From assembly GCA_001179505.1 (NCBI GenBank), contig CDMY01000314.1, forward strand, positions 1-64,000: DNA of 64,000 bases. The letters run 5' to 3'. Under the pieces are notes generated by a model that worked only from the letters and a program-made list of their open reading frames with translations, was not told the DNA's origin and ran no database searches. The DNA comes from Vitrella brassicaformis CCMP3155. Taxonomy: Eukaryota > Protista > Chromerida. The position numbers and the translations under genes are program-made. Below are positions 6,376 through 28,701 of the stretch, piece after piece. Positions within the stretch are counted from its first letter, which is position 1. Every line of letters begins with the position of its first letter.

Positions 6376-6428
6376 ATGCTAGGTCTGTGAAAGATTTCAC
6401 AGAGGGCCGCTGTCAGCGATAGAGGCGG
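6376..6428 (-). mobile_element. Second copy of the Helitron B 3'-terminal motif (subterminal repeat plus stem-loop)
   Basis: ATGCTAGGTCTGTGAAAGATTTCACAGAGGGCCGCTGTCAGCGATAGAGGCG differs from 12083-12134 at 2 positions. It contains the same 9-bp stem TCTGTGAAA/TTTCACAGA (6384-6403). Confidence 0.8.
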
Positions 6429-6429
6429 T

Positions 6430-7010
6430 TTTGTCCTAATTTTCCAAGGTGCTAGTGTGAAGATACAATGGATTCGTTCGCGTTGCCCCGACAAACGGTC
6501 TTGTGTCTCTGAAAAGCAGCGCAATTCGCCGGCATCATACAGGTCGCCGGGAACCCATGCGGTGACCTCGTGTGACGGTGATGGTAGTCAACAGCCTGTC
6601 CTAATTTTCCAAGGTGTTACTGTGAGGCTACAATCGATTGGTTCGCGTTGCCCCGACAAACGGTCTTGTGTCTCCGAAAATCCACGTAGTTCGCCAGCGT
6701 CACTTCGCAGGCCGCCGGAGACTTATCTAGCGGCCTCGTGTGACGGTGATGGTAGTCAGCAGCCTGTCCTAATTTTCCAAGGTGCTCGCGTGAAGATACA
6801 ATCGATTGGTTCGCGTTGCCCCGAGAAACGATTTTGTGTCTCCGAAAATCCACGTAATTCGCCGGCGTCACTTCGCAGGCCGTTGGAGACTTATCTAGCG
6901 GCCTCGTGTGACGGTGATGGTAGTTAGCAGCCTGTCCTAATTTTCCAAGGTGCTCGCGTGAAGATACAATCGATTGGTTCGCGTTGCCCCGACAAACGGT
7001 CTTGTGCCTC
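6430..7010. repeat. Satellite array, 165-168-bp unit, ~3.5 copies, inverted relative to the array in Helitron B
   Basis: GTGAAGATACAAT-like anchor at ~6457, 6622, 6790 and 6958. The unit matches the reverse complement of 21790-21905. Confidence 0.92.
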
Positions 7011-7699: not shown

Positions 7700-7935
7700 A
7701 CCCAGTCCCACCTGCGTTCGAAGGCCTCGAACACTCGCCTGACCCGCGGGTCCGTCCCTGCTCCACCGAAGTTGGCCACATACCCAATCAGATACCACGG
7801 CCGCAGATGGATTCGCTGGGTGAATGGAGGGCCTCGACCGCCGTTGTGCTCAGCCAGCCGGTCGCGGAGACGGGCTGTGGACCCAATGTAGAACTCCGAT
7901 GGGTCTCGTGTGCTGCCGAGAGCATACGCATAGCC
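7700..7935 (-). CDS. SLX1-like GIY-YIG endonuclease domain at the C-terminus of Helitron A RepHel
   Basis: VGYAYALGSTRDPSEFYIGSTARLRDRLAEHNGGRGPPFTQRIHLRPWYLIGYVANF matches the GIY..YIG..R.R..HN.G..T...RPW..V..F pattern. It shares an open frame with PIF1 motif VI (ORF 7525-8718). Confidence 0.88.
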
Positions 7936-8159: not shown

Positions 8160-9530
8160 GGCGGGTGCGTGACAGCAGCACCACCAGCATCGCCTTCTCC
8201 CATACATGGTACGCAGAGTCCGCCAGGTCGGCGGGGGACAAGATGCGGGTCCTCATAACATCGAAGGTGTCCCCGATGGCCTTGTGGATGGTCAGCGCGC
8301 TGTGGTGGACGAGATGAAACATGTTTCGGCGCCCCATGGTCATCCGGGAATCCAGAACGTGCGGAGACGTGTCGATGCGGGGCACGCGAATCAGCGGCCA
8401 CTGCTGAATCACGGCTGACGTCGCGGCCTGAAGCTGGCCGATGTCCACATCCAAAGGTGCCACCCGTACCGCAATGTATGGGCTCTGCGGATCCGCACAG
8501 TGAGACGCGTCGCCGACAAAGCACAGGCGCCCATTGGAGATGCCTCGGTCGTTGAGGTTGCTGCTGAACCGCATGCACGCGCCGTCCCACACCGTGAGCT
8601 GATCCGGCTCACTAAGCTTCTTCGAAATGCGCTGCACTAACCGTCGATTGCGCGTCGGCTGCCACCTATATAATACCACCATCACACCCACAAACCCACG
8701 GGTCAAGGACAGACACACCTAGCGGTATCCAGATCATTCAAACGCATACCTGCCCGGCATGTTGGACGTCTCATCCACAGCGTGCACGGTGTGCATGATG
8801 ACACTGGCCGACGTCTGCTGTACACGCCTGATGTACCGCTGGACGGCCGCCTTCTCCGCCTCCTGCTTGCCAAACACCATGGTCGCAGCGTCCGGGATAT
8901 CGTCCCAGGTGTCCACGAAGTTGCAATTTTGCTCGACGATCTGCCACGCCTGAGCAATATCGGCGGGCGAGCTCTGCGGCTTCTCCATGAGACACACGAG
9001 CTCGTGGTGGTCCCGGTTCAGATAGCGGATGCTCTCCTTGAAGAGGGCCACGCGGAACGACGTGATGAGGAGGGTGGACGACCAGAAGGTGTCCCTATTC
9101 AGCTGTACCAGCTGCGGAACCGCCCCACTAGCCATCACAACCGCACCACCGAACGGCACCTGGTTGTCCCGGATGACTCGCAAGACGATGTCCATGGCGG
9201 CGATAGTCTGAGCACTGAGCAGCCCCACTTCCTCAATGAAAAAGCAGTGGGTGACCTGAAGCAGCGCCCACCGACCAGGCGCTTGGCTGAGCGAACTCAC
9301 GGCAGCCTTGGCCTGGATGTGCGGCGGCTGCTTCTCGTGGCGCGGGTCAAGGTTGAACAGCTTGTGCACGTGGACGCTACCGAACTGCAGGGCCTTCTTG
9401 GACTGCAGTGCCGTGTACTCGATGTCGAAGCCCAGGCCTATCGCGTACAGCGCCAGCTGACAGAGCACGTGCGTCTTGCCGCTGCCGGCCATGCCTACTA
9501 GCAGCAGCCCCGGCACCCATGAAGTCAGCC
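8160..9530 (-). CDS. PIF1-family SF1B helicase domain of Helitron A
   Basis: Walker A GMAGSGKT, Walker B FFIEEVG, PFGGAVVMASG..QL, HSALTIHKAIGDT, LLSRT. One intron at ~8670-8750. Confidence 0.9.
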
Positions 9531-11239
9531 CGCTCCTGGCCGCATCCAGGATTTCACACCACATCTCGTACACCTCGGTCTGCTCATTAAACGACGCCAC
9601 CGTCTGGCCGACTGATGCAGCACGACGAATGCTCGGCTCCCAAGCAGGTGGCCCCATGCCCTGCGGCTGGGCCCTCGCCGATAAGGGTAGGTAGGGCTGT
9701 CTCAATGTCGACCTCTTCAGCTCCTCCACCAACGGGCCCCTCTGCGCAGCGGAGATATTTACGCATCCCACAAGCGTCTCCGCCAGCCGCTTGCGACGCT
9801 CCGCTCAGGCGGCCTTCACCTGCTCCGTCAACTCCCATGCCATAGACGCCATGTCCACCAGTGGGACGCCACCGACGTGGAACATGCGCCCGAAGAAGAC
9901 GTCATGAGTGTACTCATGTGCGCGCTCCAGGGTGGTGTCGAAACCCTTGGTCGTGTATGACCCATTAAAGAGGTCCCGCCTCGCCCAGAGGCGCAGCAGC
10001 CGGTCCGCATCTCTGGCCGTAGCTTCCGGATCCTCATCGGGGCGCTCGTTGAGCAACCCCGCACGCGAGAAGCTCTCAGCCAGCGACGACACCGTGAACA
10101 GGTCCATGTCACAGACGAACCGACCGAACCGGTACAGCAAATGGATGAAGAACTTGTGGGGGTTGTCCGGCTTGACGGCGGAGAACACGATGACCACCTC
10201 TTTGGCGTTGTGCCTCGTTCGCGACTCCACGAACCGCTGTACAAAGGCCTCTTCGTTCTTGTTGACCACCGCTTGCTGCAGACGCTCGAGGAGAGCGATC
10301 ATGGCACCGTGAGACGCGTACGCGCCGCTCGAGCCGCAGCGCTGTCGACAGGCCTCTACCGCCTCCATGAGGTACCGCTGGCAAAACTTGACGGTCTGCA
10401 AGCCGCCGTCGGTTAGAGGTGTGGCGGTCAAGTCCTCAGCGACGTCGTACCGGTTGCGTCGCGCAGTCGGGGGCCGCTGCGACAGGACCATCCACCTGCA
10501 CCACACCACGCGTACACAAAGACACACCCATCCATCATCCATTGATTCATGCATCCATAAGTCACACCGTCTATCCTGCTTCGTCCCTCACTCACTTGAA
10601 GTACTCCTCGATAGAATCGATCCAGTGGAGCTCGGGTGGGCGGATGCCGAATACGCTGACCTGGTCCAACGGCTTCCACGTCAGGAACAGGTCGTAGATA
10701 ACCCTGTGCTGACCCTCCGTGAACTGCCGCCAAAGTGCGTTGGGAAGGACGCGCTGCCTCGCCTCTACTGGCACCGGCTGCGTGCCCGAGCGGAAGCCCT
10801 GCGGGTTGCCCGGGCGAGGCTGTGCCGGCGCGTTCTGAACGCTGTCGACTGACAGCTCGAGATTCTTGGCCCTCCAGCCGCACCGCAGCTCCGGAGGCAG
10901 GGACGCGACATGGATGCAGTCGACCGAGGACGTCACATACGGAAAGTCGTACAGCTGCCACAGCATCTCGGAATAGGAGATCCGCAGCGCCTGCCGGTGA
11001 CGCGTGTCTCGAGGCCTTCCCTTCGTCTTGCTGTCGCTAGCAGCTGGTCCGGGTGTGCCGTCCTGCGGTCCCTGTGGTGGTTGGCTATCACCACCAGCAG
11101 CAGCTGCTGCTGCCGCGCCTCCCTGACCCTGCGCCTGGCGCGCACGCGCTTGCACCCCGCCGATCTTCGTGTTCTGGATGCCGTAGCTGTTGACGCGAAC
11201 GTCGGTGAGCGCGCCCCTGTCGGACTCACGGGCCACACT

Positions 11240-12054
11240 CAGGCTGGCCGTCGCCTTCTCCTCAGCACCCGCCACATACCTGCAAACATTCAAACAACGC
11301 AAACAACAAGCAAGAACTTCATGAACGCCATCACAGAAACATGCAGAATATGATATGATATGCATCGTCAACCTCGCGGCCTTACTTTTCGAGGTAGGCC
11401 TTCACCGACTGGTAGTCGACGATCTGGACGTTCACCGAGCAGCACAAGAGAAAGGCCATGTCGGGAATGAACTGGGACATCATCTCGTCGCCCTTCACAC
11501 ACGGAGGGTAGTGGCGGCCGCCCTCCAGCTCGACCACCGGGCGCAGCAGCGGATAATCCTCGCCGTCTGGCGTCGGACTCCTGCCGTCCAGCCCGGCCAC
11601 ATATGCGATGCGGTCCTCCGACTCCTCGGTCAGCCCCAACTTCTCGAGGATCCGCAAGACCTTGGCTGAGTGGTTCGACTGCGCCCGCTCGTAGATGTGG
11701 GTGTCCGTCACTCGATTGGGAGTCCGCCGACAGATCTTTCTGATGTTGCCCTCCCCGTCTGTCACCTCCTTCATACAGCGGCCGCCCGACTTGCTGCAGT
11801 CGTGCCGCAAGTGCTCGTTCAAAAAGTCCTCCCTGTCGAGAAAGTCCGCCTTGTCCTTGACAATCTTGAGGTCCTCCGTGAAGCGCTCGAGCGGATACCG
11901 CTGTTTCTGCCCCACCTCAGTCGACCGCCGTGCGCCCACAAAGTCGGTCGACGCCACCACGCGGTCCGTCACTTGGCGAGAGAGCCGCTCCTCTAACGTG
12001 CCCAGCAGGCCGTGCAGATGCGGGAACTGCCCGACCTCAGTCTGGAACTCTCTT
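11240..12054 (-). CDS. Helitron A Rep, C-terminal half (HUH motif and catalytic Tyr motif)
   Basis: RREFQTEVGQFPHLHGLL; HDCSKSGGRC; AYLEK|YVAG across intron 11280-11385. Confidence 0.88.
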
Positions 12055-12184
12055 CTGCAGCGCATCAGACCCACACAAAGACATGCTAGATCTGTGAAAG
12101 ATTTCACAGAGGGCCGCTGCCAGCGATAGAGGCGCTTGCTGTACGGTGTGTCAACAGACAATACGCTGTCTAATGTCATCACCA

Positions 12185-12350
12185 TCTCGCGAGGCCCCTG
12201 TATGGGCTGTAGTTGACTGTGAAATCGACAACGATAACTGTAAATTACCAAGAGACGCTTGTTTGACCGGGCAACGCGTACCACTTAAATATGTGCCCAC
12301 ATCGAAGTGCACACATAATAAGGACACGCTGTTTCATATTCTCGCGAGGC
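12185..12350. repeat. Single unit of the Helitron B satellite near its 3' end
   Basis: ACATCGAAGTGCACACATAATAAGGACACGCTGTTT is shared with 21290-21780 in the same orientation. Confidence 0.85.
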
Positions 12351-12494
12351 AGCGAATGGCAGCTACCCGTAGAACTGACCGTCATAGCTAATTGTGCATG
12401 CATTGAAGCTTTGGCGGACAACTATTGATGACTGTATCTCTCATTATGCATGCGCGAGAGGGTCTACGATGGTTCCGTCTCTGGTTTCGATACC

Positions 12495-15400
12495 TCAAAT
12501 CGACCGAGCTCTTTTTCTAGACGGGCTAGCACGAGGCAGCGGGTATTTCTCTCTTGTTGCGCGACTCAACTTTGTCAGCCGCTCAATCTCGATCTTGAGA
12601 GTGGTCGGAAATTTCTTCTTCAAGTCTTGCCTCGAGTATTGCCGGAGAATCCCCAAGCCGTCCCCATCGGTCACCCGTGAGAACGCCACAAGCTGGCCGG
12701 GACGAATGTTTGTGTTGCTGACCCATGCGGCTGGCCTCAGATCGATAATCAGGCGCTCTTTCGTTGTGGACTGCAGCTTCCAGAAGGTCAATGCGCTGGC
12801 GCTGATTATCGGCAGCTGCGTTCGTCGGACGTTATATTTGTGCTTCGGAATTAGCTTCTCCTCGTCTGGTGACGCGGGGATTCGCGAGGGCATCTCGATA
12901 GTGAAGGTGTCGGTGTGAAGAAAGACCGGCGTGAGAGGCTTTCCGGACGGCGAAAACGGCACGCCATCGATAGGAGCGTGGTCCGCCTTCTCCACGTCCA
13001 TGAAGACGCACAGCGGTAGCTCGGTCGCGACAATGATGTCGACCGGCCGATCGGACACTGTTGCTGTGTGCTTGGAGAAGAACGCGGAGGGGCTGAAAGC
13101 GGCCGAGTGGAAGGTCGCCTGGCTTCCATTGTTGATGTGCAGCTCTGTCGCATCATTGCAGGTGAGCAAGTACTGCTGATCCCGGATGAGGGCCAAAACC
13201 TACGGCATGTTGCCGGTCTTGATCTCAGAAATCATGGACAGGTGCCTGTGGAGCTCGCGAGACGGCCGTTTCTTCTGGCTGCGTTCAGTGATGTCCATAT
13301 CGTCGGCCACGCACAAAAAAATCGGCTTCTGTTCTTTGTCGGCGGCACAGAGGGCATTCATCATCACTAGAGGGATCCGCAGCTCGGCCTCCCATACGCC
13401 AATGGGTGCGGTCTGCCATTTGGGGTCGGTCATGTCAATGGCGCTTCCAGTCCCGCCAATAACGCGTGTCTCCAGCCATCGATAGTCCTCTTCAGTGAGC
13501 TTCTCATTGCGGAACCGCTCGAAGAACGCCTGATACCTGCGGCCGCTCTCCGTCTGCTTGAATCGCATCCCATCCTCGAGAAGCACGACGGTATCGAAGA
13601 GGGTCTTGTACAGCCGCACACCTGCAAGACATCACCATGTCTCATCTGTCCCTGCTCTGTTCAATGCAGTGCTTTGTACCCTCGGAAGGCTTCATCGTCT
13701 TTGCATACAGCGCTGTCCCACCGATGGGCCCAAACTGTTTGACGTCTCCAGATAAGAGGATGCTCATGTTCTCGAACGGAGGCTGGTGCTCGGCATGCGG
13801 ATCTTCGGTGGCCCGCAGCTCATGCAGGCGAGCGTTCATCTTTTCGAACAAGCTGGCGTACAGCGTCGAGTACTCGTCCACCAACAGATACCACGTTTGC
13901 TGCCACAGGACCTGAAATGACAGCTCCTTCCGCATGTCGTCAGTAGTGGCACTCCCTCGACCGCGGCGGCGGTGCTCCTGCCTGTTTCTGGGCTTGTACA
14001 CCTCTATTTGGAGGGCCGAGTGTAGGGTCGAGCCTGAGATAGTAGAGGCAGCCACACCTGAGACAGGCAATCCGCACAAAGCGCAGCGCAGATACGCAGC
14101 CCAGGTGGGACAAATCAAACCAACAGCAAATGGAAATCAGTTCATCGTACCGGTCATCGCAGTCTTTCGAAACCAGAACGGCCGACCAATACCAGCGAAA
14201 TACAGGGCCAGCGCCTGCACTACCCACAATTTGCCGCATCCGGGGCCGCCCGCAACAACCATGTTGAGTGGCGACACAGCAGCAAAGTCCCCGCAGTCCA
14301 AGGCGGCAAAGTTGTCATTCACGTGCTTGGCGACGATACGGACGACCCGCTCTTGTTCGGAATTGAGCGTGAACTTCTCGATAGCCAACTTCGCTACTCT
14401 CACGCGGTCGCCATCCGTCATGGCTTCAAACTGCATCGATTGAAGCCACCGTGTATAGTCTAGCGCGCCCGCTGCACTGCTGTCGCTCGCCTCACACATC
14501 GCCAGCAGCTCGGCGTCCGACATTCCCTGGATGCTCCGTCGTTGAGGTATGCCACCGGTATCGCGCGCTGCGTGTACTGTGGTTGGCGTGCCATCATCGA
14601 CATCCATCTCTTCCGCGCCCTCTCCCAGCCCGGCCGCGGCGATGTCCGGCTGACCGCTCCTTCGTCGCTGCAGCATTGCAAAGAGGGTCTTCTGCATAGC
14701 CTTCACTGCTGCCAGGCCCTGGTTTCTCGCGACAATATCAGTCACTCCGGGATCTTGCAAAGAGACATATGCATGTATATCTCAGGCCTTTCTTTACATT
14801 AGTTCTGACTTGAGATGGCATATTGAGCGTGGCAGATGTGGACGGCTTATCGATGTGAACATTCAGCTGTGGCGTAGTCAGGCCGAAACGCTTGCAGACG
14901 GCGTCCATGCCCTCTCTCATGTGTTTCTGGCGGTCGGCGAGGAAGCGCTCAGGGACCGACAGACTGTAGTTAACACCCGCTATGCGATCCAGCTTCTTAA
15001 ACAGCTCCACATCCGACGACCTTGCAGGGCTCGTCAGCTTGTCCACCATCACCTGCGCCTCCTTTAGCAGCGCCTGGCGAGCGTCATCCTCCTCGCGAAG
15101 TGCCTCGTCCATCTGGTCCAGCAAGTCTCGCGCGTCGAACGTGGCATTCTGTTCCTCCTGCTCACTTCGAAACGCCTTGTCGATCTTCGCGTCGGCCTGC
15201 GTGCGATGAGCGCCCTCAATGTTGTCAATCAGTTCGACTGTCCAACGCGCCACGGGGTCGTCGATGGATGTGTCTGCCGCTCGCTGTCGATGCCACGTTT
15301 CGAACTCGTCCAGCGCGTCCTGCCACGTTCGACACAAGCCTTTCAGCTGCTTCACTAAATTGAAGCCGGTCCGATTGGGTCTCTCGGTGCACGCCGCATC

Positions 15401-18400
15401 CACCGAAACAATGGATCGCGGTGAGTGCCCTTCAGAGGGACACTTTGAGTCAGGTGAGACATCACCGTGGATCGGCAGCTGCGACTCCGCCTCAACATAT
15501 ACAGCACTACAGCTGGCGTCCACGTCCTGCAGCAGCTGATTCAGGTCCAGGTCGAGCTGACAGGGCCGCTCCTGAAAGCTGCTGCCTACAAAGGGCTTGA
15601 GCAGAAGCAACAGCTTTGTAGCGCGGTCCTTGATGGCCCCCGGCTGCTTTAAGTAGCGGCTCGGAATGGCCATACTCAAAAGGGGCACAGCCGATTTGTC
15701 CACATCCCTCTAAATACACACATACAAATACGGAGACACGGGTTTTTGGGGCAAATTTTAGTGATTCATCCACCCACCCACACCTGTCGCAGCTGGCACT
15801 TAGTGTGCAGTGGGTGTTGCGCTGTAAAGTAGAAGGCCCTGTCTTTTTCAGCCAGCAACTCAGCGGCATCGGCAGCGTGAGTGTAAGCCGACAAGCGGCG
15901 CACCTCGCTCGCCTCTGTGCTCTTGTATATGCGTTCGAACAGCTCGTGAAACAGTCAGACGGGGACCCGTGTATTAGCAGCTTCACCGAGTCGCCTTCTC
16001 TGGTACACATGACATCGGAAGGAACTCTGATCTCCACTCCCTCGGTCACTCGAAACAGATAGTCCTGCGCCTTACTAGACAGGACCGTCGACGCTTGTCC
16101 ATCGGCTTGGTGGACACGCATGAGCACCGTCTCATCGTTCTCCTCATCGTCGCTCACGTCGTCCTCTGTGAGACGCCCTTATCGCTCCTCGGCCGCCAAG
16201 AGCTTGAGGAAAGGGAGGGAGTGAAGGGGGTAGGTGGGGTGAGACATGTAGTAGTCTCCATCGTCTCCATAGCCCAGCAGATGCCACATGACCTGACACG
16301 CAGACATTTGGATGCGGGCGTTGAGGGAGTTGGTTATGCCGGTGATGAAAAGGCGATGCTGCTCGACGGCCTCCTCTGTATTTGCATAGCGCTCCAGGTA
16401 CTTCTTGCAGCCCACTGCGACGATCGACACCAAGTCGTGCAGCTTGATATCCATCTTGGAGCTGTAGTTGGTGAGCTGCAGGCAACACATATAGAGACAT
16501 GGCCCCAGGCAGAGAAAGTGAATAGCCCCAGAATCGGTCACTTACATAGTGCACCAATGCATACACCCGATCCGCAGTCAGGAGCAGGAACTTTATGTTG
16601 TTGTTCGACCGGATGGCGACCGTGACATGAAGAGAGTGGCCGGTCGTTCAGCGGTGGTGGCGACGAAAGCGAATGATGCCGCACTTGGTGATGGTGATAG
16701 TCATGTAGATCATCTTTTGCCATGCTCAGGCGGCACGGGATTAGGGTGCTCAGCTTGTTGGCCTCCTCCTTTAAATTGAGTGCCTCTCGACGAAGGGCGT
16801 CGTTGTTGGCCGTCTCGCCCTTCGCCAGGTCCCGCAGTCGACTGTTGTAGTCGCTCATGAGCCTCTTGGCTTTGCGCATCACCTGCTGCCACTTGAACTT
16901 GTTGCTCTTCTTGATGCACAACATGGTGTGCTTCTTGCAATGCAGCAGGCTGCGACATGCGACGGCCATAAACCGGCGGCTGAATTGGAGATTGAGGTAC
17001 TCGCTGTCTTTGCTGTCGGCCAAAAAGATGCGCCCAATGAATGTGGCCGGATCCACATACTCTTTGGACTGCTCGACGTCCAGCCACGGGTCAACATTCA
17101 TAGTGCTGTTGTCGCTGGTCTCGTGACCGGGGTAGTACAGCTTGGTGACCAGCTGTTTTTTCTGTGTCGTTGTCAGGGGTTCGAAGAGCCGTTTGGGGTC
17201 CGGATCGCTGAGGAAAGCGTCCTTCGCCTCGGCAGCCTTGGGAGCTACCTTTGGAAAGCCAAACAAGTCCTCAGCGTCTCTCGCACCTGCGTCGTCCTCC
17301 TCCATCACCTGCTCGTCATCGGCCGGCCCCACAAACTCGTCCATGGTCTCAAACGGGGCGAACGATGCGACGCATGAGCTCGCACTACCACAGGATTTTA
17401 CGCTGAGGGGCTCTCCCTCATCGTCCGACTCCAACTGAGGGGCCCAGAATTCATCGTCGCCCTCCACAGACACATCATCATCCACGCTTCGCATGTCCTC
17501 TTCCACGTGCAGAGACGGCACAGGGGCATTCTTGGCAACGTCGAGGAGACGCTCGACGTCCTCAAAGTGCATCTCAGAGCCGAGCGAGACGCGCCCGTAC
17601 CACGGCGACTTCACGTCCAGCACGGCATGCTGCTCGGGCGTCAGCTTTGCATGAAGCTCGAACTCATGCACGTCCTCGTGAATAGTGAAATCCAGCCACT
17701 ACTCCAGCTCGTGACAGAACTGTCGGTCAGTCATCTTCTTTCGTAGCTCCCGTGGAGAGGGCGCCCCCTTCAGGAAGTCCAGGTGGTGAAAGTGGAGGAT
17801 TCTACGCCCCTAGCTCTCTGAAGGGCCGATCGACGCCTTGCATTTGCCGCTGACACCAGGCCGAGGGTCTAAAGGGCGTCGCAATAGACATGCAAGGAAT
17901 GCCCGCACGCAGATGTTGAACATCTCTGCAGCCACCGCGGGGTTGCGGGCCGCCATCTGGCGGCAGCGCTGGATGTGCTTGTTAAGAGGTGGACATTCGT
18001 TCAAGTCAAACACCTACTCCTTGCTGAGCACGCCCAACTGCCAGAGAAGCGTGCTCTTGAGGTCGTAGAAGTTTTGAGTCGAGAACAGTACCAGCACGTC
18101 GAACTCTACAATGTAAGACAGGATCTGCCTGCGGGCGTACTCTTTAGTGCCGGGAGAGCCCGGGACCCCACGCGAGACCGTCTTTACTTATCAGGACAAC
18201 CACACAGAATACAAACAGTTCTCAGGTGAATCCTGAGTTTTTCTTTTTAACTTCTCACGTCGGCCATCCACGCCTGAAAGTCCGCGTCTTTCAAAGCGTA
18301 GGGCAGATTGATCGTCGCCAATTGCTGTGCTCGCTCCATCCATTTCTCGAGACTGGCAGGATGGATGTGCGAAAGCAGGCCATGCCGTGCCGGCTGCCGG

Positions 18401-21021
18401 ACACGCAGCGAGGCCGCTCGATTTATTTCCTGGCGCTGGAGCATGTTGAAGACCAGAAACTTAAACACTTTATGCTCGCGCACGTTAGGCTTCCACTGCT
18501 GCAGCAGCTACTTGACATGCTCCTTGAGAGACACGCGCTGGCTGCCTCTACAATGCCCCCCTCCCGGCGCACCCCGGTCGAACGGAAAGAAGTCGGGAAA
18601 GCAGTCGACAAAGAAGTCGGGGTTCTTGTACTCGATGAGGAGGCCGTCGATATGGTAGTTAGCAGGAATGAACAGATTTCTCTTTCTTCCTATATCCACA
18701 CACATGGCGATACTGTGTAGCAATCAAACTGCCAAGTTTTTATTGTTCTCTCTCTATGCGCATTCACACATAGCGATGTCGCCGTGAACTCATCGCGCCG
18801 TGCCGTTCCTGAGGCTGCTGGCTGCCCATCACTGACGGTGCTCAGCGTGTCGTCCATTGAGTAGCGATCGCCGTCCTCTTCTCGCTCTTGACGTCCCCCA
18901 AACCGTGTGAAGTGCTGCATAGCGCGGCGAGCCCGCTCCGATAGCGGGAGGTCGTCGTTTTTATTAGAGATCATCCCAGAGGTCGTCATACAGACCTCCT
19001 CGCGATTGTCCATCGACACATCGTAGATGTCTCTGTGTCGCCGATTGATGGTGTCGTCCTGCTTGAGGTTCTCTTCGAAGAGGTCCGACTCCTTCGCAAA
19101 CTCCAACCACGGCCTGGGCACCTTTTTATATGAGGCCGCATCCCTACCAAACGCCGCCGGCTGTGGCAGCTTGATCACGTGCTTGGGGTCGAGCCATACC
19201 TCGTCCTCAGCATACCGATAGCAATTCCTTTACAGGAACTCCATCAGCGGCGTTATCTTGCTGCCGTCAACACCCAGCATGTGCCGGGCGTGTCTTTTGA
19301 TGAAGTTGAAGTCCGCCTTCTCGTTCGGGCGTATATAGACAATACACATATACCGACTCATCTGATCAACGTCGCGAGGCAAGATTCTCTGAATCTCGTG
19401 GTGCAGCCGATCGATGTCCTGTGGGACGACAAATACAGTCCCAAACACTGCCAACTAGCGGTCTGCATCCGAGACGACGCCAGTACCGTCCCCCGCCGGG
19501 TACAGCTTGTAGATGCAGTGAAAGGGGATAGCCTTTGATACCAGTAACAGCTCACCCTCGGTCCGCTCGGTCACGATCTTGACCTCTTTGCAGTCCATCG
19601 GGCCACGCCATAGACCGTTAGCCAAACTGAGCCGCGGGCACGTCTTCACTGTGGGCCGCGTTAGGTGGCGCATGCACTCGATGCAGATGGTGACCATCTC
19701 GTCCTCCCACCGGATGGCGGCCAGTTGCAGTGGCGCTCCATCGAACTTGGCCATCACCGGGTGCTCGGGATACCGTTCGGAGTAGGTGAGCGCCTTCACA
19801 CAGAGCGCGTCTCGGAGATTTGCAGGGTCGGGGCGGTCCTCGTCGCGGAACTGCAGGAGGTGCGCAAAGTTGGCGAGCGCATGCAAATCGATGCGCCTGA
19901 CTTTGTCGGAAGAAATATCGTTCAGCGTATCCAATATGAACTGGGCTCGATCACGACGCTCCTTCTCACGCTGTGCAGCCACAATGTCTTTCAGCCTGAA
20001 GCGCTTATATCGCTGCCACTGCTGCTCGACCTCGCCTATGCACTGGCGCAGATCCGATTCGCCCAAGGATTTGCCCCTCTCGCTGAAGGTGCAGCGAAAG
20101 GCGCGACCGCACACCACACACGGGTGCTTGACGTGGCGGTAGTGGGCGGTGACTTCAGCGTACTGGTTGACACATCTACACAGCACCACCACACGAAAAG
20201 CGACACAATCTTCTTCTTTCGCACCATACCACAGTTCCTCATTGATTGAATACTCACATGCAGGCGTTGTCATGGGTGTACACCCATGGCGGGAACTGAG
20301 CATCTTCATCGCTCTGTGCCGCCTGCACAGTGTCGCGACTTCGCGCGGAGGGCTCAGAGGGAGAGAGCCCGAGTGTAGTAGCTCCCCACACCTCACCATC
20401 TTGCACCCCCTTCCCGACCTCCGGTTCCAGCCCTGCATCCCAGAATACGCCCTTGTCCCACAGAAAAGACCCCCATGGGAAGCGGTCGATGAACTCTTGA
20501 GACACCCTGTTGTTCTCCTTTATCTGCGCCAATCGCTTAATGACCCCTTCCATACACTCCCGCCTCTTGGCCTGTGTCGCGGTCTCGTGCTGCTTCACCC
20601 ACCCTTTTTTCCGCGCCTCGGACTGCTTCTGTTGTGGCTCCTCTCGTGTAAACCCTCTCTCCTGAGCGTCGCTCCGCCGAGTCTCCCACCCTGCCTTGGC
20701 AGCGGCGGAGCGGCGGGCCCGCTGCTTTCGCTGCTCCGCTTCAGTCAGAGTCACGTGTTGCGCGTTGTTCCGCCGGGTCTCCCATGCTGCCTTGGCAGCG
20801 GCGAGGCGGCGGACCCGCAGCTCATCCTCAGTGACTCCCGCCTGTTGCGCGTTCGCTTGCCGAGTCTTCCAGCCACGCCGTCCTTCCCCGCTGATTGCCG
20901 CCTGTCCTATCTCCTGGCGCCGGCGCTCATGTGCGGCTGCATTCGAAGCCGAGCGAGTCGCACTCTTCCTCCGCTTCCTGGCCCGGTCGGCAGGCAGGCT
21001 GACCGACCGCTCAGTTCGCAT
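12495..21021 (-). pseudogene. RepHel gene of Helitron B (basic repeats - DUF6570-like - Helitron_like_N - HUH Rep - PIF1), inactivated
   Basis: PRLSLANGLWRGP (DUF6570-like); HKVFKFLVFNMLQR; AARNPAVAAEMF; HUH ES*GRRILHFH; ALVHYV|TNYSSK; QMSACQVMWHLLGYGD. PIF1 motifs GGPGCGKL, AMT|GVAASTISGSTLHSAL, LLVDEYS, SGDVKQF, RRTQLPI, VAFSRV. About 10 in-frame stops and at least 2 frameshifts. Confidence 0.92.
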
Positions 21022-21269
21022 AGCTCTCTCGCCTAAAAGATATGCAATCAAATGCTCTCAAATTACGCGAAAACGAAAGAGATCCGAAAACGAAAGAGTT
21101 TCCGCGGTATTAGGGCATTTAATCCGTGAAACACTGATTTGGGCCAGTAGTGATTTGGGGCCACTACCGGCCTTGAATGAGAAAGAGAACAGTGGTGGAT
21201 CCTCTCATTCCTGCATGATGACATACACATCAATATATGTCAGCACCTCCATCCTGTGGGAGCCGCAGA

Positions 21270-21905
21270 CGACAACCGTATATCACCAAGAGACGCAGGA
21301 TTGTTTGTCAGGGCATCGCGTACTCATTGAGTGTGTGCCTACATCGAAGTGCACACATAATAAAGACACGCTGTTTAATATTATGACGGTCACACGAGGT
21401 CCCTGTATGTGCTGCAGTTGCCTGTGGCAGCCATAGTGACAACGGCGAATTACGGAGAGACGCAGGATTGTTTGTCAGGGCATCGCGTACCACTTGACTC
21501 TACGTTCACATCGAAGAGCACACATAAGAAGGACACGCTGTTTAATATTGTGACGGTCACACGATGTCCCTCTATGTGCTGCAGTTGCCTGTGGCAGCCA
21601 TAGTGACAACAGCGAATTACGCAGAGACGCAGTATTGTTTGTCAGGGCATCGCGTACCAGTTGACTGTACGTTCGCATCGAAGTACACACATAATAAGGA
21701 CACGCTGTTTAATATTATGACGGTCACACGAGGCCCTGTATGGACTGCAGTTGCCTATGAAAGCCATAGTGATAACGGCGAATTGCGCAGAGACGCAGGA
21801 TTGTTTGTCTGAGCAACGCGAACCAGTCGATTGTATCTTCACATCAGCACCTTGGAAAATTAGGACAGGCTGTTCACTACGACTACCATCACACGAGGCC
21901 GCCGC
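21270..21905. repeat. 167-bp tandem satellite (~4 units) in the 5' region of Helitron B
   Basis: GACGCAG anchor at 21292, 21459, 21626 and 21792 (periods 167, 167, 166). The fourth unit is diverged. Confidence 0.95.
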
Positions 21906-22282
21906 ATGGGCCGTGGGTGGCTCGTGAAACCTATAGTGACAACCGTAAATAATCACGAATAGGGCCGGTAGCAAATCGTTTTGCGAGGCGAACTCGCTTT
22001 GAGGCCCGGAAATGAGAGAGAGAACAGTGCTGAACCTTTAATATATGCATGATGATACATACTCATCAACAGTTGTCGGCACCGAAAGTGGTTCCCACAT
22101 AACCACCATATATTGCATGATCAGCTAAGGCGACCAGCCCTACAGCCAGCTGCCAGGCTTATAACCTGGGAATAGCCTAGGCTGGCAGCTGCACAAAGCA
22201 ACACAACAAGTATGTGTGTGCGCCTGCTCTCTGCTGTGTGGAGTGTGTTGTGTGTGTGGGTATATATCTATCAACGGCTTAC

Positions 22283-25200
22283 CGGACCCACTCTTTGATC
22301 ACCTCGCCGGCCACTCCGCTCTCCCGCATATACCGAATAATGTACTTCAGGACGCGGTTCCAGCACCGCAGCAGCATCGGCATGTACGACTGGATGGCGT
22401 CCTCGTCTTGGTTGCCCGCATCGTCAGTGAACCGCTCGAGAATCCTGTTGTACAGCACCGCAAAGCCTGATCGACACAGATAAACGCCTTCGTCCATTCA
22501 AACAACTACCCATCCACGCATCCATCCATTCATACCCCCAATCCCAGCGTACCGAACTGCCGCCGCATGTTGAGGGTGACCGTGTAGAAGTAGGTGGGCA
22601 GCTCTTTGCCGGTCACCAGGTCGTTCAGGAGCTCCTCACTGGAGATGCGCTCGTTGGTCACCCCACTCTCCACCTCCGTCCACGCCGACAGCTCCCGGAC
22701 GCGCCTTCGCGCCTCGCTCGCATCCATGGGCAGCGCCGTCTCGATGACTTCCCTAGTGCTGTCCTGCCGCTGCTTCATGTACTCGGTCCCTCGGTCCAGT
22801 ACGAGCGCCGAGTGTGTATGGCTGAGCTCCATGTTGATGTAGATGTTGTACATGAACCCAATATAGTTCTCGTTGGCTGCGGTTCGGAGGCAATGGTCGC
22901 GGATGCGCAGCTTGAAATGCTTCATTGCAGAGGCGATCCTGCGCTTGCCATTCTACGATGGGGAAGAGAGCATGGATGCGGGAAGGGCGCCGATGGAAGT
23001 GTGGTCCCTCTTGTCCACAAAAAAGAATGTCGGGGAACATGTCGGCCTCCGGGTGAGTGAGGCATGCACCGCGCGTCGAGTCCTTGGCCGTGAAGCTCTG
23101 CAAAAACCGCTGTGCCGACAGCTTTATCTTGCTGTCACCCTTCTTGAGACGCCGCAAAAGTCGAAAGCACGGATTGAACAGAAGGTGCGCCCAGATCCGG
23201 TCGCCATGTGGGCTGATGCTGTACAGAGGGAGCTGGCTGCTGTCCACGTCGAGAAGCCGGTCATCGGTCGCGTCCTCCGTGCCGAAGTCTGCGGGCCCCA
23301 CGTCCGTCACCGCATCGGCAACCACCTGCTCCCACGCGGCATGCTCCGCCCGGTCCGCAGCGTCCTGTGGGTCGACAGGCTCCTCATCCAACGCACAGTT
23401 CCTCAGACACTCACTGATGATGTCCCACTCTACCTCGGCATGCCAAGTGTCTTCCTCTGGCGCGCCGTCCTGATGGCCGCCGCCACCGTCACCATCGACG
23501 TTCATGTCAACATCAGCAGCTGCACCGGTTGCCATACCAACGGCATTCTCACTCTCGCACTGTCTCTGCGATGCCCCGAGTCGATAGCACAGCAGCCGAT
23601 AGCCGACGTCCTCCTCGCTCTCGGCCTCGCCGACCTCCCTGCTGACCTCGGCGAAATGTTTAGCACACAGACCCACCGGACAGCTTCACCTAACACGGCT
23701 TCCCCAGTGTGTCTTGAATGGGCAACAGTAGCGGACCACCTTCGCCTGGCATGTTGCGGGGCGCAGCTCGACGCTGTCCAGACTCGCATCGAACGGTGGA
23801 TAGCAGCACCCCACGGACTCTTGCAGCAGTGAAAGCGGTGAGAGGACGGTCAGATAGTGGTTGTCGTGCTGGTGACACCTGACAATCGACTGGCCGCTCG
23901 TCAGCTCCCGGAGACGGACCTGAGCGTCCGTTCGAATGCTCGCAGCACGTCGCGCAAACATCATGCTTGTCCAGCTTGTCAGCACTCGCAATGCGCACGA
24001 CTCGACTGCCTCGTTGGCCCTCAGACTCCATGCCCGTTGCGGTGCATGTCCATCAGATGCGAACCACCAGCCAGGATGGTCCGCTCCCCACCGCATCAGC
24101 GCGCAGGTTTGGTAGCTGTCAGCAGCATAGCGACGCTGCTGTCGCGAAAGCTGCACCGACGACTCACGTGGGAGCACCGATGCGATGCACACCAGGTCAT
24201 ACGCCTCGTCGAACAGGTCGAACGATGTAGCGATCTTTTCCAACATACCTACACCATCACGCACATCCATACAATACACATCAGCCCTTCCATGCCAGAC
24301 CTCTGGTTTTTGTCACAGGCCTGAATACCTGGATCGACGCCGTCCTCGCTCGGTTGGCTGTTATTCATCAGAATCACCACCTCCGGATGCCTCGCAAAGA
24401 CACAGCGCGCAAAAGCAGCCGTCGACCAATCGAAGGCCGCCCGGTCAGCCTCCGACAGGGCCGCGACACCTTGACTAAACGTCATGGCATGCCGCACGCC
24501 CTCCAGCGCGATCCCCCCTCGCCGAGCAAGCAGCCACGGCACGGTCAACACGCCGTCCCACGGGTGCATCCCACAAACGGCGAAGAGCATGTTTGACGAG
24601 AAAGCAGGGCGCGTCGAGAGCCCAGCGAACCACGATGTGAAGTTCGTGTAAGTCGCCCTCGCCTGCCGGCCGCGCCCATGACTGCGCTCCGTCCTTGTAG
24701 CACGCCGCTCAATCACGCCCACCGCAAAGTTGGCCGCGTCGGTGAGCCACGCCCGCTCTGCGGCATGGACGTCCATAACCTCATCCCCGTCGCCAGGATT
24801 GGCCGCACCAGATCCCACAGGCTCGTGCACCACCTTCAAACGCTCCATCATCAATCGCCACAACACCGGTGACACCGTGACCATACGACCAAAGAGCCAC
24901 AGGTCCCCAAACTGGTGGTTGGCTGGGCACGGCACTGCTGGCACCGTCGCCCCGTGTACGGTCGTCGGGTGCACCATGCACAGAGGGCGAATGCCGATCG
25001 GCCGCTGCGTCGGCGCGTGACGGCCACGAGCACCTCCACCACCACCGTCAGCACCAGCATCCTCACCACCATCATCGTCACCATCATCTTCACCACCACC
25101 ACCATTCGCAGTAGCACCACCGTCGTTGCCATCATTTGCGTCGCCCGCATCGACTCCACTCCCACCACCAGCTGCATCCCGACCACTGTTGCGCTGTGCA

Positions 25201-27449
25201 CTGTCCTGCCTCTGCCGCCCCTGACCGTCACCTGCGTCGATCGACTCAGTCGCCATGAAGGCCGCATAGCCATCCAGCGCATCGCTGAAGGATATGTACG
25301 TGCCACCACAGTCGTCAACACCGTGGAACGGCTGCTGAGCGGCACGAGCCGCCTCTGCTGGAAACTCACGCTCGTACCCAACGCACTCCTCCTCAACCCA
25401 GTGAACATGGTTGACGTCCTCGTCATGCAGGTGGTATTCACGCAGCCCATCATTGCAACACAGCATAGAGCCTTCCAGCTGGTACAGCCGGGGATCCTGG
25501 CGGTTGAAGCTGGAGCGCCTGGTCAAGCTGAAGTTGGAGATGCCATCGTACTCCACGTTGGCATACACCATGCCCATCGCTGCAGAGTTGTGCCCCAAAC
25601 GCCGCGGCTTAAACCGGTGTGGCTGCGTGTTGATGCGCGCAAGTCGGTCGGCATAGTTTAGGCATCAGTCGGCACGACAACACCGGGCACAAAAGGGTTG
25701 GTGGGCACATGCAGCCACAGAAGTGCGCCGTCTTTTTTCGGGTCGTGCTCCAAACACCCACAGTAGCCGAGGCCGGTCTCTCGGCTCCATGCAACAGCAG
25801 GCCCAGTACGCCACCCGAAGAAGTCGTCGTCCACATGAAGCAGCCAGTCCGTCCGAAAGCCGTCCGTCACTATGGTGTCGTCACCTGTATAGCTCGCGTC
25901 GATCAGGTGCCAGATCTGCCCGAATGGGTGCAGCGCAGTGTCCTCCAGGAACTCCCAATCACTAAATGGACACCGCACCTGCAATTAATGAATATATATA
26001 TTATATGCCACCTCCATATTGCTCCCTCCAGCCACCTGACGCACCTCGAGAGCGGCATGCCTGTCGAACACTGCAACGGCTCGCCAGACGGTTCGCTGAT
26101 TGATTGGACCGTATATGTCCTCAATGGCCCTCTCGCGCTCACAGGTGACATCCTTGAGTGCACTCCGGCGATCCATCTCATGCCTGTCGACCGGTCAATC
26201 AAACAATCAAACAAAAGCATGCCATCAAGCAATCCACCAAACACACATCTATCCTTTCTTGTCTGCTTGCCTGCTCAGTGTCCCCACGCAATAACGGGAT
26301 TTTCGAAAGAAGCACCGCGTCTCCATGGCACACGCTGTATGCGTTGAAGAACTGCGCTGCATTCGCCCAGAAGACCGTGACAGATGGGGGCAGCAGGCGC
26401 AGCACCTTCTCGGCCTCTGCCAGACTCGCACCGCCGATCGTGTCAGCAATCGCTGCTGCTCATGTGACACTCCAATGCTTGCAACTGACATGCGCCAACA
26501 GGCCGTCTGTCTTGTCCTTTGACAGATGACGTACACACTCGTCACAGAGCACGAACTCGGGCACGTCAATCTCTCGACCACTGCCAAACTTCCCGATGAA
26601 GCCTCTCAGCGATCGTCGGTCTCGGTTTGCGAAGCTCAGGCTCTCCCGCTGAACGGTCCAGAGGCTCATCGGAATGTGGTGGCCCTCCACCGGCGCCCGC
26701 CCACAGTTGTGACAGCAGCCGCTCGCAAACGCGTACGTCGCCAGCTCGCTGCTCACGCGGGCGTCGACTGACGGGGCTGCCCGGCGCCGCTCTCGACCTG
26801 ATTGTCGGTTTGCTTGACGATGCACTGCATACTCCGAGTAAGATGGACACCGCCTGCCCCTCGGGCACGTCTCCTCGCGACACTGCCGACACGCGTGAGG
26901 GCAGTTGCGACAATCGTGACCCTCTGCACCACAATTCGAGCACCGGCGCCTTCGTCGCGTGCCCTGCCGCGCTGCCGTTCCCTCCTGTTCCTCGGCCTCG
27001 TCACCGTCACTCTGCTGATTCACACCACCATCATGTCGCTGCTGGTTTGGGCGAGGCCGAGCCCTGAAGTGTGGACAGTGTCTGCCCCTTTCACACATCT
27101 CGTCACCGCACATCCGACACACTTCAGGGCAATTCCGGCAGTCGTGGTCCACCCCATCACAGTTGGAGCATCGCCGCCGCCTCCGAGTCCCCTCGCGCAC
27201 CATCGGCTCGTCCTCCATCGGCTCGTCCTCCTCGACTTCATCATCCCCATCGCCAATCCCACCATCATCGTCCTCACCCTCACTCGCATGACCCTCTTCA
27301 TCGTCAGACACACGAAACGATGCCTCAGAACCCACAAGATCCCCCAGATCTCCGACAAATGACTCGCTGTCGGCTGCATCATCATCACTGAACGCATGCA
27401 CGAAATCTCCACTCTCCAGTGACACCCCGTCGTCGTCGAACGCCTCCAT
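22283..27449 (-). pseudogene. Helitron A RepHel, N-terminal half
   Basis: Two C-x2-C-x4-H-x4-C knuckles (CSNCDGVDHDCRNC, CSNCGAEGHDCRNC); HPEADMFPDI; LPTYFYTVTLN..QFG; RCWNRVLKYIIRYMRESGVAGEVIKEWVR, which splices in phase to RREFQ at 12054. Confidence 0.87.
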
Positions 27450-28106
27450 TGAACACTCCGCGGACACCAAAATCTCTCCCAACGCAGATCACTCGCGCTC
27501 ACACTCCGATTCCTGATGCAAAGGCACACTACTCGAGATAACACGACAATGGCTGTTCTGTCTGCCTTCTGAACTTCGACAACTCTGAGCTGCTTGGAGT
27601 GGGGAAAACGGACCAAAGGGCAGAAAAAGCTTGCAAAGTGGGGGCACAACAAGCTCGCAAGATAAGCGTGAAACTCTCCCTCTCTAACTCTCTGCCAAAC
27701 CCAGAACCCCAGAAAGATACGTCGACTGATGGAGTACAGGGCATGTTGAGTTTGTGTGGAAAGGTTTGTTGGAGCCGGTCCTCGCTCTTGCTTGGGACCC
27801 ACCAGTGTAGTATTCATATTGTGTCTTCTTGGCCGTCCCTCCCTCTATCTCAATCTGTCTCCCTTCATGCTTTTCATCACGCCTCTCTTCCAATACGTCC
27901 CAAGTGGCAGGCCTTTTTTCAGACCATGGCATGTTACGATAAATGATGGGGGGGAGGGGGAAGATTGAGAGAAACAGAAGCTACCGTGTGTGAAAAAACC
28001 CTTCAAAAGCAGAGAAACCCCACGCGTTTCTCCTCGATGCCTATACAGACTCTAGGTCAGACGTACTGGTGAAGCCTGCCAGTGTTTGTGTTCCCCTTGT
28101 ACAAGA

Positions 28107-28701
28107 TGGAAGGAAGGAAGAACAAGGCGTGATGCGACGGATCTGCTGCAAGCAGCATCTGCCACTTCATCTGCGCACGGCAGCGAAGAGCCGGACGAAG
28201 AGGGTAGGCACGGAGAAAGGACGGCGGGAGGGCGAGGGAAGTCATTGCAATGACTGTTCATTGTGTTCTATCACACGTGTGTGTGGGTGCGGTGCGTGTC
28301 TGTGTGTGTGTCAATCAAAGCAAGAGGCGGGGTGCTGCGGGTGTGATCAACCGCGAGGATGTTGAGGATGCATGGCGACAGACGAGCACAGCAGCAGTCG
28401 ACACGAGGACAAGACCCGGTTCGGGGCCCTCAGGGAGGCGTCGTCACCACCCACAGATGTTGCCCAAGGATTCCCCTTGCGGATGCCTATCAAGGCCATC
28501 TTCGACGGCTTACCCTCGTCGCTGGTTACCCCACAAGGTCGCTTCGACAAGGCAATTCGGCTTGACATGGTGCGGGAGACAAAAGGGGTGGGCGGCTTGA
28601 CGTGGATGAGGGCTGTGCGTCAGACAGCTGAGTACCTGGCGTCCGAGGTGCATCTGGTGGGTCACCGCTGTGGGCAGCTCAAGGTGGGTGTGATGGGATA
28701 G
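28107..28701 (+). CDS. Hypothetical protein or gene fragment
   Basis: Exon-like ORF 28372-28701 with a probable upstream exon at ~28107-28200. No recognisable domain. Confidence 0.3.

What the first reader, a model, noticed from the sequence alone, without database searches (positions are those of the whole stretch)
12055..22282. A 10-kb Helitron nested in the small intron that splits another Helitron's HUH catalytic motif
Exon ...GEVIKEWV-CG|GTAAG (donor 22282) joins in phase 2 to CTGCAG|A-AGA-GAG-TTC-CAG (acceptor 12055), rebuilding WVRREFQTEVGQFPHLHGLL exactly. Removing B (12081-22191) leaves a ~110-117-bp intron typical of this genome. B is a different family but co-oriented, and it leaves A's splice sites intact, so A could in principle still have been spliced. 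This is a parasite-of-a-parasite arrangement. It raises the possibility that B targets introns of related elements, or that the composite (two Reps, two helicases, one nuclease) moved as a unit.
Basis: partly seen in the sequence, partly recalled or inferred. Interest (0 to 1): 0.85.

Follow-up and report, generated by a model that had tools for sequence, protein, structure and literature searches.

The report
Helitron nested in another Helitron's intron
A 10.1-kb rolling-circle transposon really does sit inside a short, conserved intron of a second, unrelated rolling-circle transposon in the alga Vitrella brassicaformis, but both copies are dead, so this is an ordinary nested-transposon fossil and not a new parasitic strategy.

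Summary
The window is the first 64 kb of Vitrella brassicaformis CCMP3155 contig CDMY01000013-series record CDMY01000314.1.

Element A lies on the minus strand, about 27.5 kb to 7.5 kb. It is a divergent Rep + PIF1 helicase + GIY-YIG element. Its exon ending at 22283 and its exon starting at 12054 are contiguous, gap-free and in phase 2 in spliced transcripts of a paralogue, A2 (about 60% aa identity). The A2 genomic locus carries a 54-nt GT..AG intron at exactly that codon.

Element B is window 22194 to 12083, 10,112 bp. Its ends are set by two other genomic copies and one extra 3' terminus. It has Helitron2/HLE2-type ends: a 5' hairpin, an 11/12 asymmetric inverted repeat, and a 3' hairpin 8 nt from the end. 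It has no target-site duplication. It encodes DUF6570 + Helitron_like_N + PIF1.

Removing B leaves a 116-nt intron. A's other introns are 66-106 nt.

The wider interpretation is not supported:
- The other two B copies are not in A-like DNA.
- No second A+B composite was found.
- A carries 3 nonsense codons and at least 2 frameshifts.
- B carries 6 Gln-to-stop codons.

Verdict: a real, old, ordinary nested insertion. The two element families themselves are the more interesting by-product.

The parts
26463..27488 (-). Element A, upstream acidic/CCHC-knuckle ORF
   Evidence: The translation shows two CxxC..HxxxxC knuckles. The same module lies upstream of the main ORF in the A2 transcript L001.
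22283..26417 (-). Element A, 5' half of the Rep-helicase gene (exons 2-6, with short introns)
   Evidence: tblastn of the A2 protein gives 42-68% identity in order along this span. Rep motif I (PTYFYTVTLN) is at about 22.58 kb. Copy-specific stops are TGA 23686-23688 and TAG 22953-22955. Frameshifts lie at about 25660 and about 23030.
22195..22282 (-). 5' remnant (88 nt) of A's intron 6, starting with donor GTAAGC
12083..22194 (-). Element B, 10,112-bp Helitron2/HLE2-type element
   Evidence: Similarity to L004 (88.6%) runs 22194..12417 and 12133..12083. Similarity to L003 (92%) runs 20530..12083. Flanks differ in every copy.
22148..22194 (-). B 5' terminus: GTG + 5' asymmetric inverted repeat GCAGCTGCCAGC forming a 10-bp-stem hairpin
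   Evidence: The repeat matches the reverse complement of the 3' subterminal GCTGGCAGCGGC at 11 of 12 positions.
21269..21943 (-). B subterminal array of about 167-nt tandem repeats
16541..20508 (-). B Rep region: DUF6570 at 19455-20438; HUH (H-F-H) codons at 17794-17786
   Evidence: Pfam DUF6570 E=3e-7 in the window. The paralogue P0003 has DUF6570 at 64 bits and Helitron_like_N at 40 bits, both above cut-off. Stops at 19455-57, 19230-32, 18014-16, 17810-12 and 17699-701 stand where paralogues have CAG/CAA.
12498..14781 (-). B PIF1-like helicase region
   Evidence: Pfam PIF1 E=3e-10. Stop at 13200-13202 versus CAG in both paralogues.
12083..12124 (-). B 3' terminus: 3' inverted repeat (12113-12124), 8-bp-stem hairpin (12091-12110), then TCTAGCAT
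   Evidence: Four copies end identically at ...CTAGCAT and are followed by G, T, A and A. Fold.
12055..12082 (-). 3' remnant (28 nt) of A's intron 6, ending CTGCAG
11386..12054 (-). A exon 7 carrying the EFQ..FPHLHGLL block (H-L-H codons 12020-12012) and the Y motif AYLEK|Y at its 3' end
8734..9903 (-). A PIF1-like helicase core
   Evidence: Pfam PIF1 at 25.6 bits in the window and 28 bits in A2. TGA at 9805-9807 stands where L009 and the inverted fragment have TGG.
7774..7926 (-). A C-terminal GIY-YIG nuclease domain, in frame with the helicase C-terminus
   Evidence: Pfam GIY-YIG at 23.3 bits in the window and 33.1 bits in A2; cut-off 22.6.
6376..6430 (-). Second B-type 3' terminus, same orientation, 1.15 kb downstream of A's stop codon
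   Evidence: 95% identical to 12083-12137. Its owner is unresolved.

Best explanation
An old nested transposon insertion. Element A is a copy of a divergent Helitron-like family of Vitrella brassicaformis. Its single long gene (Rep with HUH and Y motifs, PIF1-type helicase, C-terminal GIY-YIG nuclease) is broken by nine short spliceosomal introns. Element B belongs to an unrelated Helitron-like family with Helitron2/HLE2-type ends. B integrated by rolling-circle transposition, without a target-site duplication, into A's intron 6. It landed 88 nt after the donor and 28 nt before the acceptor, in the same orientation as A. Afterwards, and possibly partly before, both copies decayed by ordinary point mutation, mostly C:G to T:A. 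Neither can now make its protein.

Shown: the exon join, the conserved intron, B's exact ends, the absence of a duplication, the difference in family, and the inactivating mutations.

Inferred: the rolling-circle mechanism (from the family features), and that landing in an intron was chance or simply tolerated, not targeted.
For: - Exon continuity: spliced A2 transcripts L001 and L007 align gap-free across the junction.
- Conserved intron: L005 5939-5992 is 54 nt, GT..AG, phase 2, at the same codon. All eight coding introns of A2 fall at A's intron positions.
- Intron size: the residue is 116 nt, against 66-106 nt for A's other introns and 52-112 nt for A2's. The genome-wide figures also imply introns of about 100 nt (16.41 Mb of intron, median 6 introns per gene, 22,817 genes).
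- B's ends are fixed by independent copies with unrelated flanks.
- B's terminal architecture matches the published Helitron2 definition.
- B family domains: DUF6570 + Helitron_like_N + PIF1.
- A and B proteins are unrelated at BLAST and hhalign level.
- Decay of B: 6 Gln-to-stop codons, 276 copy-specific substitutions of which 64% are C>T or G>A, and several 1-2-nt indels.
- Decay of A: 3 Trp-to-stop codons and 2 frameshifts.
- Nested Helitrons are already documented in maize.
Against: - No empty-site copy of A itself was recovered. The only close A copy, L009 (88% nt), stops 165 nt short of the junction.
- A's own termini were not found, so its status as a mobile Helitron rests on protein motifs, domain order and multiple copies. 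Its Pfam Helitron_like_N score is below the cut-off (15-18 bits against 28.9).
- B does not show the T|T insertion preference reported for HLE2. Its flanks are T|G and A|A.
Confidence: 0.9

Rival explanations
1. Intron homing: B-type elements preferentially integrate into introns of A-type or other Helitron genes, so that the host element stays expressible.
For: Introns make up only about 7% of A's gene span (about 730 of about 9,850 nt), so an intron hit is mildly unexpected for a random insertion. B is co-oriented with A.
Against: This rests on a single case. The two other B copies in the genome have no A-like coding sequence within 10 kb and lie between annotated genes. The insertion-site flanks share no motif. 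B's own 5' end creates a nearer AG that a gene model uses, truncating A.
Confidence: 0.04
2. Composite unit: B plus the downstream half of A is, or was, mobilised together. B's 5' end initiates and replication reads through to the second B-type 3' terminus at 6376, making a 15.8-kb element with two 3' ends that carries A's helicase and GIY-YIG.
For: A second B-type 3' terminus (95% identical over 55 nt) lies in the same orientation 5.7 kb downstream of B's own end. No B-type 5' end lies between them. Helitrons with several 3' termini arising from nested Helitrons are described in maize.
Against: No other copy of such a composite was found. The A' fragment L009 and the A2 locus are B-free as far as they reach. 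The stretch next to the 6376 terminus is made of B-family repeat units in inverted orientation, which looks like a rearranged B-family fragment.
Confidence: 0.05
3. Assembly artefact: the short-read assembly wrongly joined a B copy into A.
For: The assembly is a shotgun draft, and B is a repeat with at least three copies.
Against: Both joins fall exactly at B's biological termini as defined by other copies. The two flanks reconstitute one intron of normal size with the correct phase. The B copies are only 87-92% identical, so they should not collapse in assembly.
Confidence: 0.02
4. A is still functional and removes B as a 10.2-kb intron.
For: The donor GTAAGC and the acceptor CTGCAG are intact.
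Against: There are three in-frame stops and two frameshifts in A's exons. The intron would be about 100 times the usual size. The public protein for this locus carries no MMETSP source tag, unlike A2's. The gene model ends inside B.
Confidence: 0.01

Closest known systems
Helitron2 / Helentron group (HLE2) of rolling-circle transposons (Bao & Jurka 2013, PMC3627910; Thomas et al. 2014, PMC4067079; HELIANO paper, PMC11417382)
   Same: B has the defining end structure. A short inverted repeat starts 2-3 nt from the 5' end and folds into a 5' hairpin. Its partner lies directly upstream of a 3' hairpin, about 30 nt from the 3' end. B also has subterminal tandem repeats, no target-site duplication, and one Rep-helicase gene.
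   Different: The insertion sites are not T|T. B's Rep carries DUF6570 and Helitron_like_N and has no endonuclease domain. Its phylogenetic placement among HLE1 and HLE2 Reps was not tested.
Helentron (Rep-helicase with a C-terminal AP endonuclease) and the Sphagnum HLE2 family HelenSM92 with a GIY-YIG domain (PMC11417382)
   Same: A and A2 have a nuclease domain fused in frame after the helicase. This is the same position as the Helentron endonuclease. The nuclease is GIY-YIG, as reported for HelenSM92.
   Different: The nuclease is GIY-YIG, not AP-type. A's Rep is so divergent that Pfam Helitron_like_N stays below threshold. A's termini are unknown, so HLE2 membership cannot be claimed.
Nested Helitrons and multi-terminus Helitrons of maize (PMC3288121)
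   Same: One Helitron lies inside another, co-oriented, with a further compatible 3' terminus downstream.
   Different: Here the host position is a spliceosomal intron of the host element's own transposase gene. There is no evidence that the nest was re-mobilised.

Membership tests
Helitron2/HLE2 (element B) | Rep (HUH, Y motifs) followed by a PIF1-type helicase | tested here: met
   Window: DUF6570 and PIF1; HUH as GRRILHFHHL and the Y motif YALVHY read directly. Paralogue P0003: Helitron_like_N at 40.4 bits, above the 28.9 cut-off. The neighbouring gene has PIF1.
Helitron2/HLE2 (element B) | 5' asymmetric inverted repeat 0-2 nt from the 5' end forming a 5' hairpin; its partner immediately upstream of a 3' hairpin 20-30 nt from the 3' end | tested here: met
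   GCAGCTGCCAGC starts at nt 3 of B. The reverse complement of the 3' GCTGGCAGCGGC matches it at 11 of 12 positions. The 3' repeat lies 2 nt before the hairpin and 30 nt from the end. The 5' stem is 10 bp and the 3' stem is 8 bp.
Helitron2/HLE2 (element B) | No target-site duplication | tested here: met
   The flanks of the window copy and of L004 share nothing. The apparent CTTTGTG repeat includes B's own GTG.
Helitron2/HLE2 (element B) | Insertion between T and T | tested here: not met
   The flanks are T|G (window) and A|A (L004). The 3' flanks of the four termini are G, T, A and A. Only two 5' ends are available, so the 5' boundary is good to about 1-2 nt.
Helitron2/HLE2 (element B) | Rep-helicase clusters with HLE2 reference proteins | not tested
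   No reference set (Repbase or HELIANO models) was available in the tools.
Canonical Helitron/HLE1 (element B) | 5' TC, 3' CTRR, insertion between A and T, no 5' hairpin | tested here: not met
   B starts (G)TGCAG and ends CTAGCAT, so its CTAG lies 3 nt inside the end. It has a 5' hairpin, and its flanks are not A|T.
Helitron-like element (element A) | HUH Rep domain recognisable as Helitron-type | tested here: inconclusive
   The motifs are in the right order: PTYFYTVTLN, EFQ..FPHLHGLL, YLEKY. Pfam Helitron_like_N reaches only 15.5-18 bits against a 28.9 cut-off, although it aligns to the HUH end of the model. There was no PDB sequence hit, and the structure model was unusable at pLDDT 32.
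Helitron-like element (element A) | PIF1-type helicase downstream of Rep in the same gene | tested here: met
   PIF1 scores 28 bits in A2, above the 25.9 cut-off. It lies in one reading frame with Rep in the spliced mRNA L007.
Helitron-like element (element A) | Defined termini and several copies in different contexts | tested here: inconclusive
   Copies: the window A, L009 (88% nt), a 144-nt inverted fragment at 6208-6351, and A2. Termini were not found. No flank is conserved between A and A2.
Helentron (element A) | C-terminal apurinic/apyrimidinic endonuclease | tested here: not met
   The C-terminal nuclease is GIY-YIG (PF01541) in both A and A2.
Nested transposon insertion | Insert with complete ends; host sequence continuous once the insert is removed | tested here: met

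The most novel reading that the evidence does not exclude
The locus is a frozen intermediate of Helitron chimerisation. B's 5' end, B's own 3' end and a second B-type 3' end at 6376 bracket A's helicase and GIY-YIG half. Read-through of the first terminator would therefore export a 15.8-kb composite and hand a nuclease module from one Helitron lineage to another. Landing in an intron of the host element's transposase gene would be what let such a nest persist.
Probability: 0.05. Interest if true: 0.55.

Novelty: new member of a known kind. Interest (0 to 1): 0.3.

Why it matters
As a nested insertion it matters little. Transposons land in each other all the time, and nested Helitrons are already described.

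The by-products are more useful:
1. Vitrella, a photosynthetic relative of apicomplexan parasites with only about 2% transposons, has at least two deeply different Helitron-like lineages. The three B copies alone (about 29 kb) exceed the 18 kb of Helitron reported for the whole genome.
2. The A/A2 lineage has a GIY-YIG nuclease fused after the helicase and nine introns conserved across 60%-identical members. A2 is still transcribed and spliced. This gives a second, independent example of a nuclease-bearing Rep-helicase element besides the AP-endonuclease Helentrons and one moss family.
3. The public gene models at this locus are artefacts of the nest. One ends inside B, and it skips A's stop codons with invented introns.

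Tried and rejected
- A scan of JGI metagenome contigs for A relatives gave 599 pattern matches but none was confirmed.
- PDB sequence searches with the B-family Rep and the A2 Rep found nothing.
- AlphaFold2 of the A2 Rep region with a 5-row alignment gave mean pLDDT 32, so it was unusable and no fold search was run.
- hhalign of the A-family against the B-family Rep gave no signal; the profiles are too thin.
- A's own termini were sought in three ways: searching for B-like 5' ends, searching for the predicted partner of the 6376 terminus, and comparing A and A2 flanks. All were negative or at chance level.
- Independent Logan contigs across the A/B junctions were sought by exact-ORF look-up. 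They are not on record.
- A 7-bp target-site duplication (CTTTGTG) was considered and rejected.
- A RIP-like or editing-type hypermutation was considered because all nine nonsense codons come from C:G to T:A changes. It was rejected as unnecessary. The same bias, partly at CpG, is seen in all three B copies, and the number of Gln-to-stop changes is within about twofold of a rough neutral expectation that I estimated by hand from the substitution counts.
- Stop-codon reassignment was considered and rejected. The paralogues have CAG or TGG at those sites, and frameshifts are also present.
Full report
**Source.** L002, fetched through the annotated protein P0002, is 100% identical to window 35577..12140. 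It comes from NCBI GCA_001179505.1, record CDMY01000314.1, positions 12140-35577. The window is therefore the first 64 kb of that contig of Vitrella brassicaformis CCMP3155, a chromerid alga. The published genome has 58% GC, a median of 6 introns per gene, 16.41 Mb of intron in 22,817 genes, 1.5 Mb of transposons and 18,147 bp annotated as Helitron.

**The observation.** On the minus strand an exon ends ...GAG TGG GTC CG and is followed by GTAAGC; the last exon base is 22283. The sequence CTGCAG is followed by A AGA GAG TTC CAG ...; the first exon base is 12054. The join is in phase 2 and reads ...GEVIKEWVRREFQTEVGQFPHLHGLL.

A protein search with the downstream exon found one relative, on JGI contig L001. 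Its long ORF aligns without a gap across the join, reading ...GEILKHWIRVEFQALMGHFPHLHGLL.

A later search found the genomic locus of that relative in the same genome (L005, CDMY01000013.1) and further assemblies. L001 and L007 are spliced copies of L005. L006 and L008 are unspliced. L005 has nine introns of about 52-112 nt. Intron 6 (L005 5939-5992, 54 nt, GT..AG) lies after the same CG of the same Arg codon...TGG ATA CG|gtaagg...tgcag|G GTA GAG TTT CAG.

All eight coding introns of this paralogue (A2, about 60% aa identity) fall where the window's element A has its interruptions. A's other introns are 66-106 nt. The exon join and the short ancestral intron are therefore confirmed with transcript evidence from a paralogue.

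**Element B.** An exhaustive HMMER search with a B ORF found two proteins at 85-89% identity. They lead to two more B copies in the same genome:
- L004 is full length (88.6% nt identity).
- L003 is 5'-truncated or rearranged (92% nt identity).

Similarity to L004 starts at window 22194 (GTGCAGCTGCCAGCC...). Similarity to L003, to L004 and to a further terminus at window 6376 ends at 12083 (...TCTAGCAT). The flanks are unrelated in every copy. B is thus 22194..12083, 10,112 bp, and the intron remnant is 88 + 28 = 116 nt.

The heptamer CTTTGTG that seems to flank B is 4 nt of flank plus B's own GTG on the left. On the right it sits 2 nt beyond the end. It is not a duplication.

B's ends fit the published Helitron2 description:
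- The 5' repeat GCAGCTGCCAGC starts at nt 3 and forms a 10-bp hairpin.
- It matches the reverse complement of GCTGGCAGCGGC at 11 of 12 positions.
- That 3' partner lies directly upstream of an 8-bp hairpin, which is followed by 8 nt.
- Subterminal 167-nt tandem repeats are present, as in many Helentron relatives.
- The T|T target preference of that group is not seen.

The B family encodes DUF6570, Helitron_like_N and PIF1.

**Element A.** A's gene runs from about 27.5 kb to 7.5 kb on the minus strand. In order it contains:
- an acidic/CCHC-knuckle ORF;
- a long N-terminal region;
- Rep motifs (PTYFYTVTLN; EFQ..FPHLHGLL; YLEKY);
- a PIF1-type helicase;
- an in-frame C-terminal GIY-YIG domain.

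Pfam Helitron_like_N stays below its cut-off. Calling A a Helitron therefore rests on motifs, domain order and copy number, not on a curated threshold. A GIY-YIG domain in an HLE2 family has one published precedent, in Sphagnum.

A and B proteins show no BLAST or profile similarity. 'Different family' is if anything an understatement.

**State of the copies.** Compared with its paralogues, the window's B has TAG or TAA in place of CAG or CAA at 19455-57, 19230-32, 18014-16, 17810-12, 17699-701 and 13200-02. The fourth of these lies two codons before the GRRILHFHH motif. The 17699-701 stop is also TAG in L004. B also has several 1-2-nt copy-specific indels.

Of B's 276 copy-specific substitutions, 64% are C>T or G>A. 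This bias is shared, less strongly, by the other copies.

A has TGA or TAG in place of TGG at 23686-88, 22953-55 and 9805-07. It also has frameshifts near 25660 and 23030.

A2, although transcribed and spliced, is one 2,618-codon frame with four internal stops. All these elements are fossils.

**The wider interpretation.**
- Neither of the other B copies has A-like coding sequence within 10 kb, and both sit between annotated genes.
- No other A+B composite appeared. The only close A copy (L009, 88% nt) covers window 11889-9635 and stops 165 nt short of the junction.
- Introns are about 7% of A's gene, so an intron hit is only mildly unexpected.
- Correct splicing across B is doubtful. B lies 28 nt from the acceptor. 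B's first six bases, GTGCAG, supply an AG 94 nt from the donor, and the public gene model P0002 uses that AG before stopping 16 codons into B.
- Nested Helitrons, and Helitrons with several 3' ends derived from them, are known from maize.

**Unresolved.** A second B-type 3' terminus (6376-6430, 95% identical) lies in A's orientation 1.15 kb after A's stop codon. Next to it is a 168-nt tandem array related, in inverted orientation, to a repeat near B's 5' end. A2 has no such terminus. I think it is a rearranged B-family fragment and not A's own end. Near-identical termini shared by distinct Helentron families have been reported, and the composite reading cannot be fully excluded.

**Verdict.** The finding is real and precisely described, but it is an ordinary nested insertion of two dead elements.

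Noticed in passing
window 6376-7043: A second B-type 3' terminus (hairpin + CTAGCAT) abuts about 3.5 copies of a 168-nt repeat. That repeat matches, in inverted orientation, a unit near B's 5' end (21790-21910; L004 5666-5788). No matching B-type 5' end exists elsewhere in the window.
   Followed up: partly
window 6208-6351: A 144-nt inverted copy (90%) of the start of A's helicase exon (9773-9914). It keeps the TGG codon that is TGA in A at 9805-9807, so it is a remnant of another A-type copy.
   Followed up: partly
window 5641-5957 and 7010-7329; 5307-5632: A 320-nt direct repeat (94%) brackets the 6.0-7.0 kb segment, and a 121-nt tandem array follows it. The origin is unexplained.
   Followed up: no
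L005 1086-10566 (A2 locus); L007 1065-8918: A2 is transcribed and all nine introns are spliced out, yet its 2,618-codon frame has four in-frame stops (codons 1610, 1864, 2228, 2356). A has sense codons at those sites, so A2 is an expressed pseudogene.
   Followed up: partly
window 22140-25577 (public protein P0002): The annotated 982-aa protein uses A's donor at 22283, splices to the AG in B's first six bases and ends 16 codons inside B. It also lacks the peptides around A's stop codons, so the model invents introns to skip them.
   Followed up: yes
L003 (protein P0003, residues about 668-676): The L003 copy of B reads GRGILYFHHL where the window copy has GRRILHFHHL. It has therefore lost the first His of the HUH motif even though its frame is open there.
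   Followed up: no
window 32443-35820, 42500-49700: Another repeat family is present in several inverted copies (80-96% identical), with 40-nt tandem repeats at 44281-44544. It contains a 15-mer (GTGCCGCTGCCAGCC, 33647-33661 minus strand) that matches B's 5' end at 14 of 15 positions, but internally, not at a repeat boundary.
   Followed up: partly
window 58833-63696 (+): Three consecutive long ORFs (757, 306 and 493 aa) have no Pfam match. They may belong to a further mobile element.
   Followed up: no
L009 1-3209: The 3.2-kb contig with an A-type copy (88% nt) covers window 11263-10639 twice. This is either an internal duplication or a collapsed assembly of two copies.
   Followed up: no
genome-wide (literature): The genome paper lists 18,147 bp of Helitron for Vitrella. 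The three B copies found here alone total about 29 kb, so these families were largely missed.
   Followed up: partly
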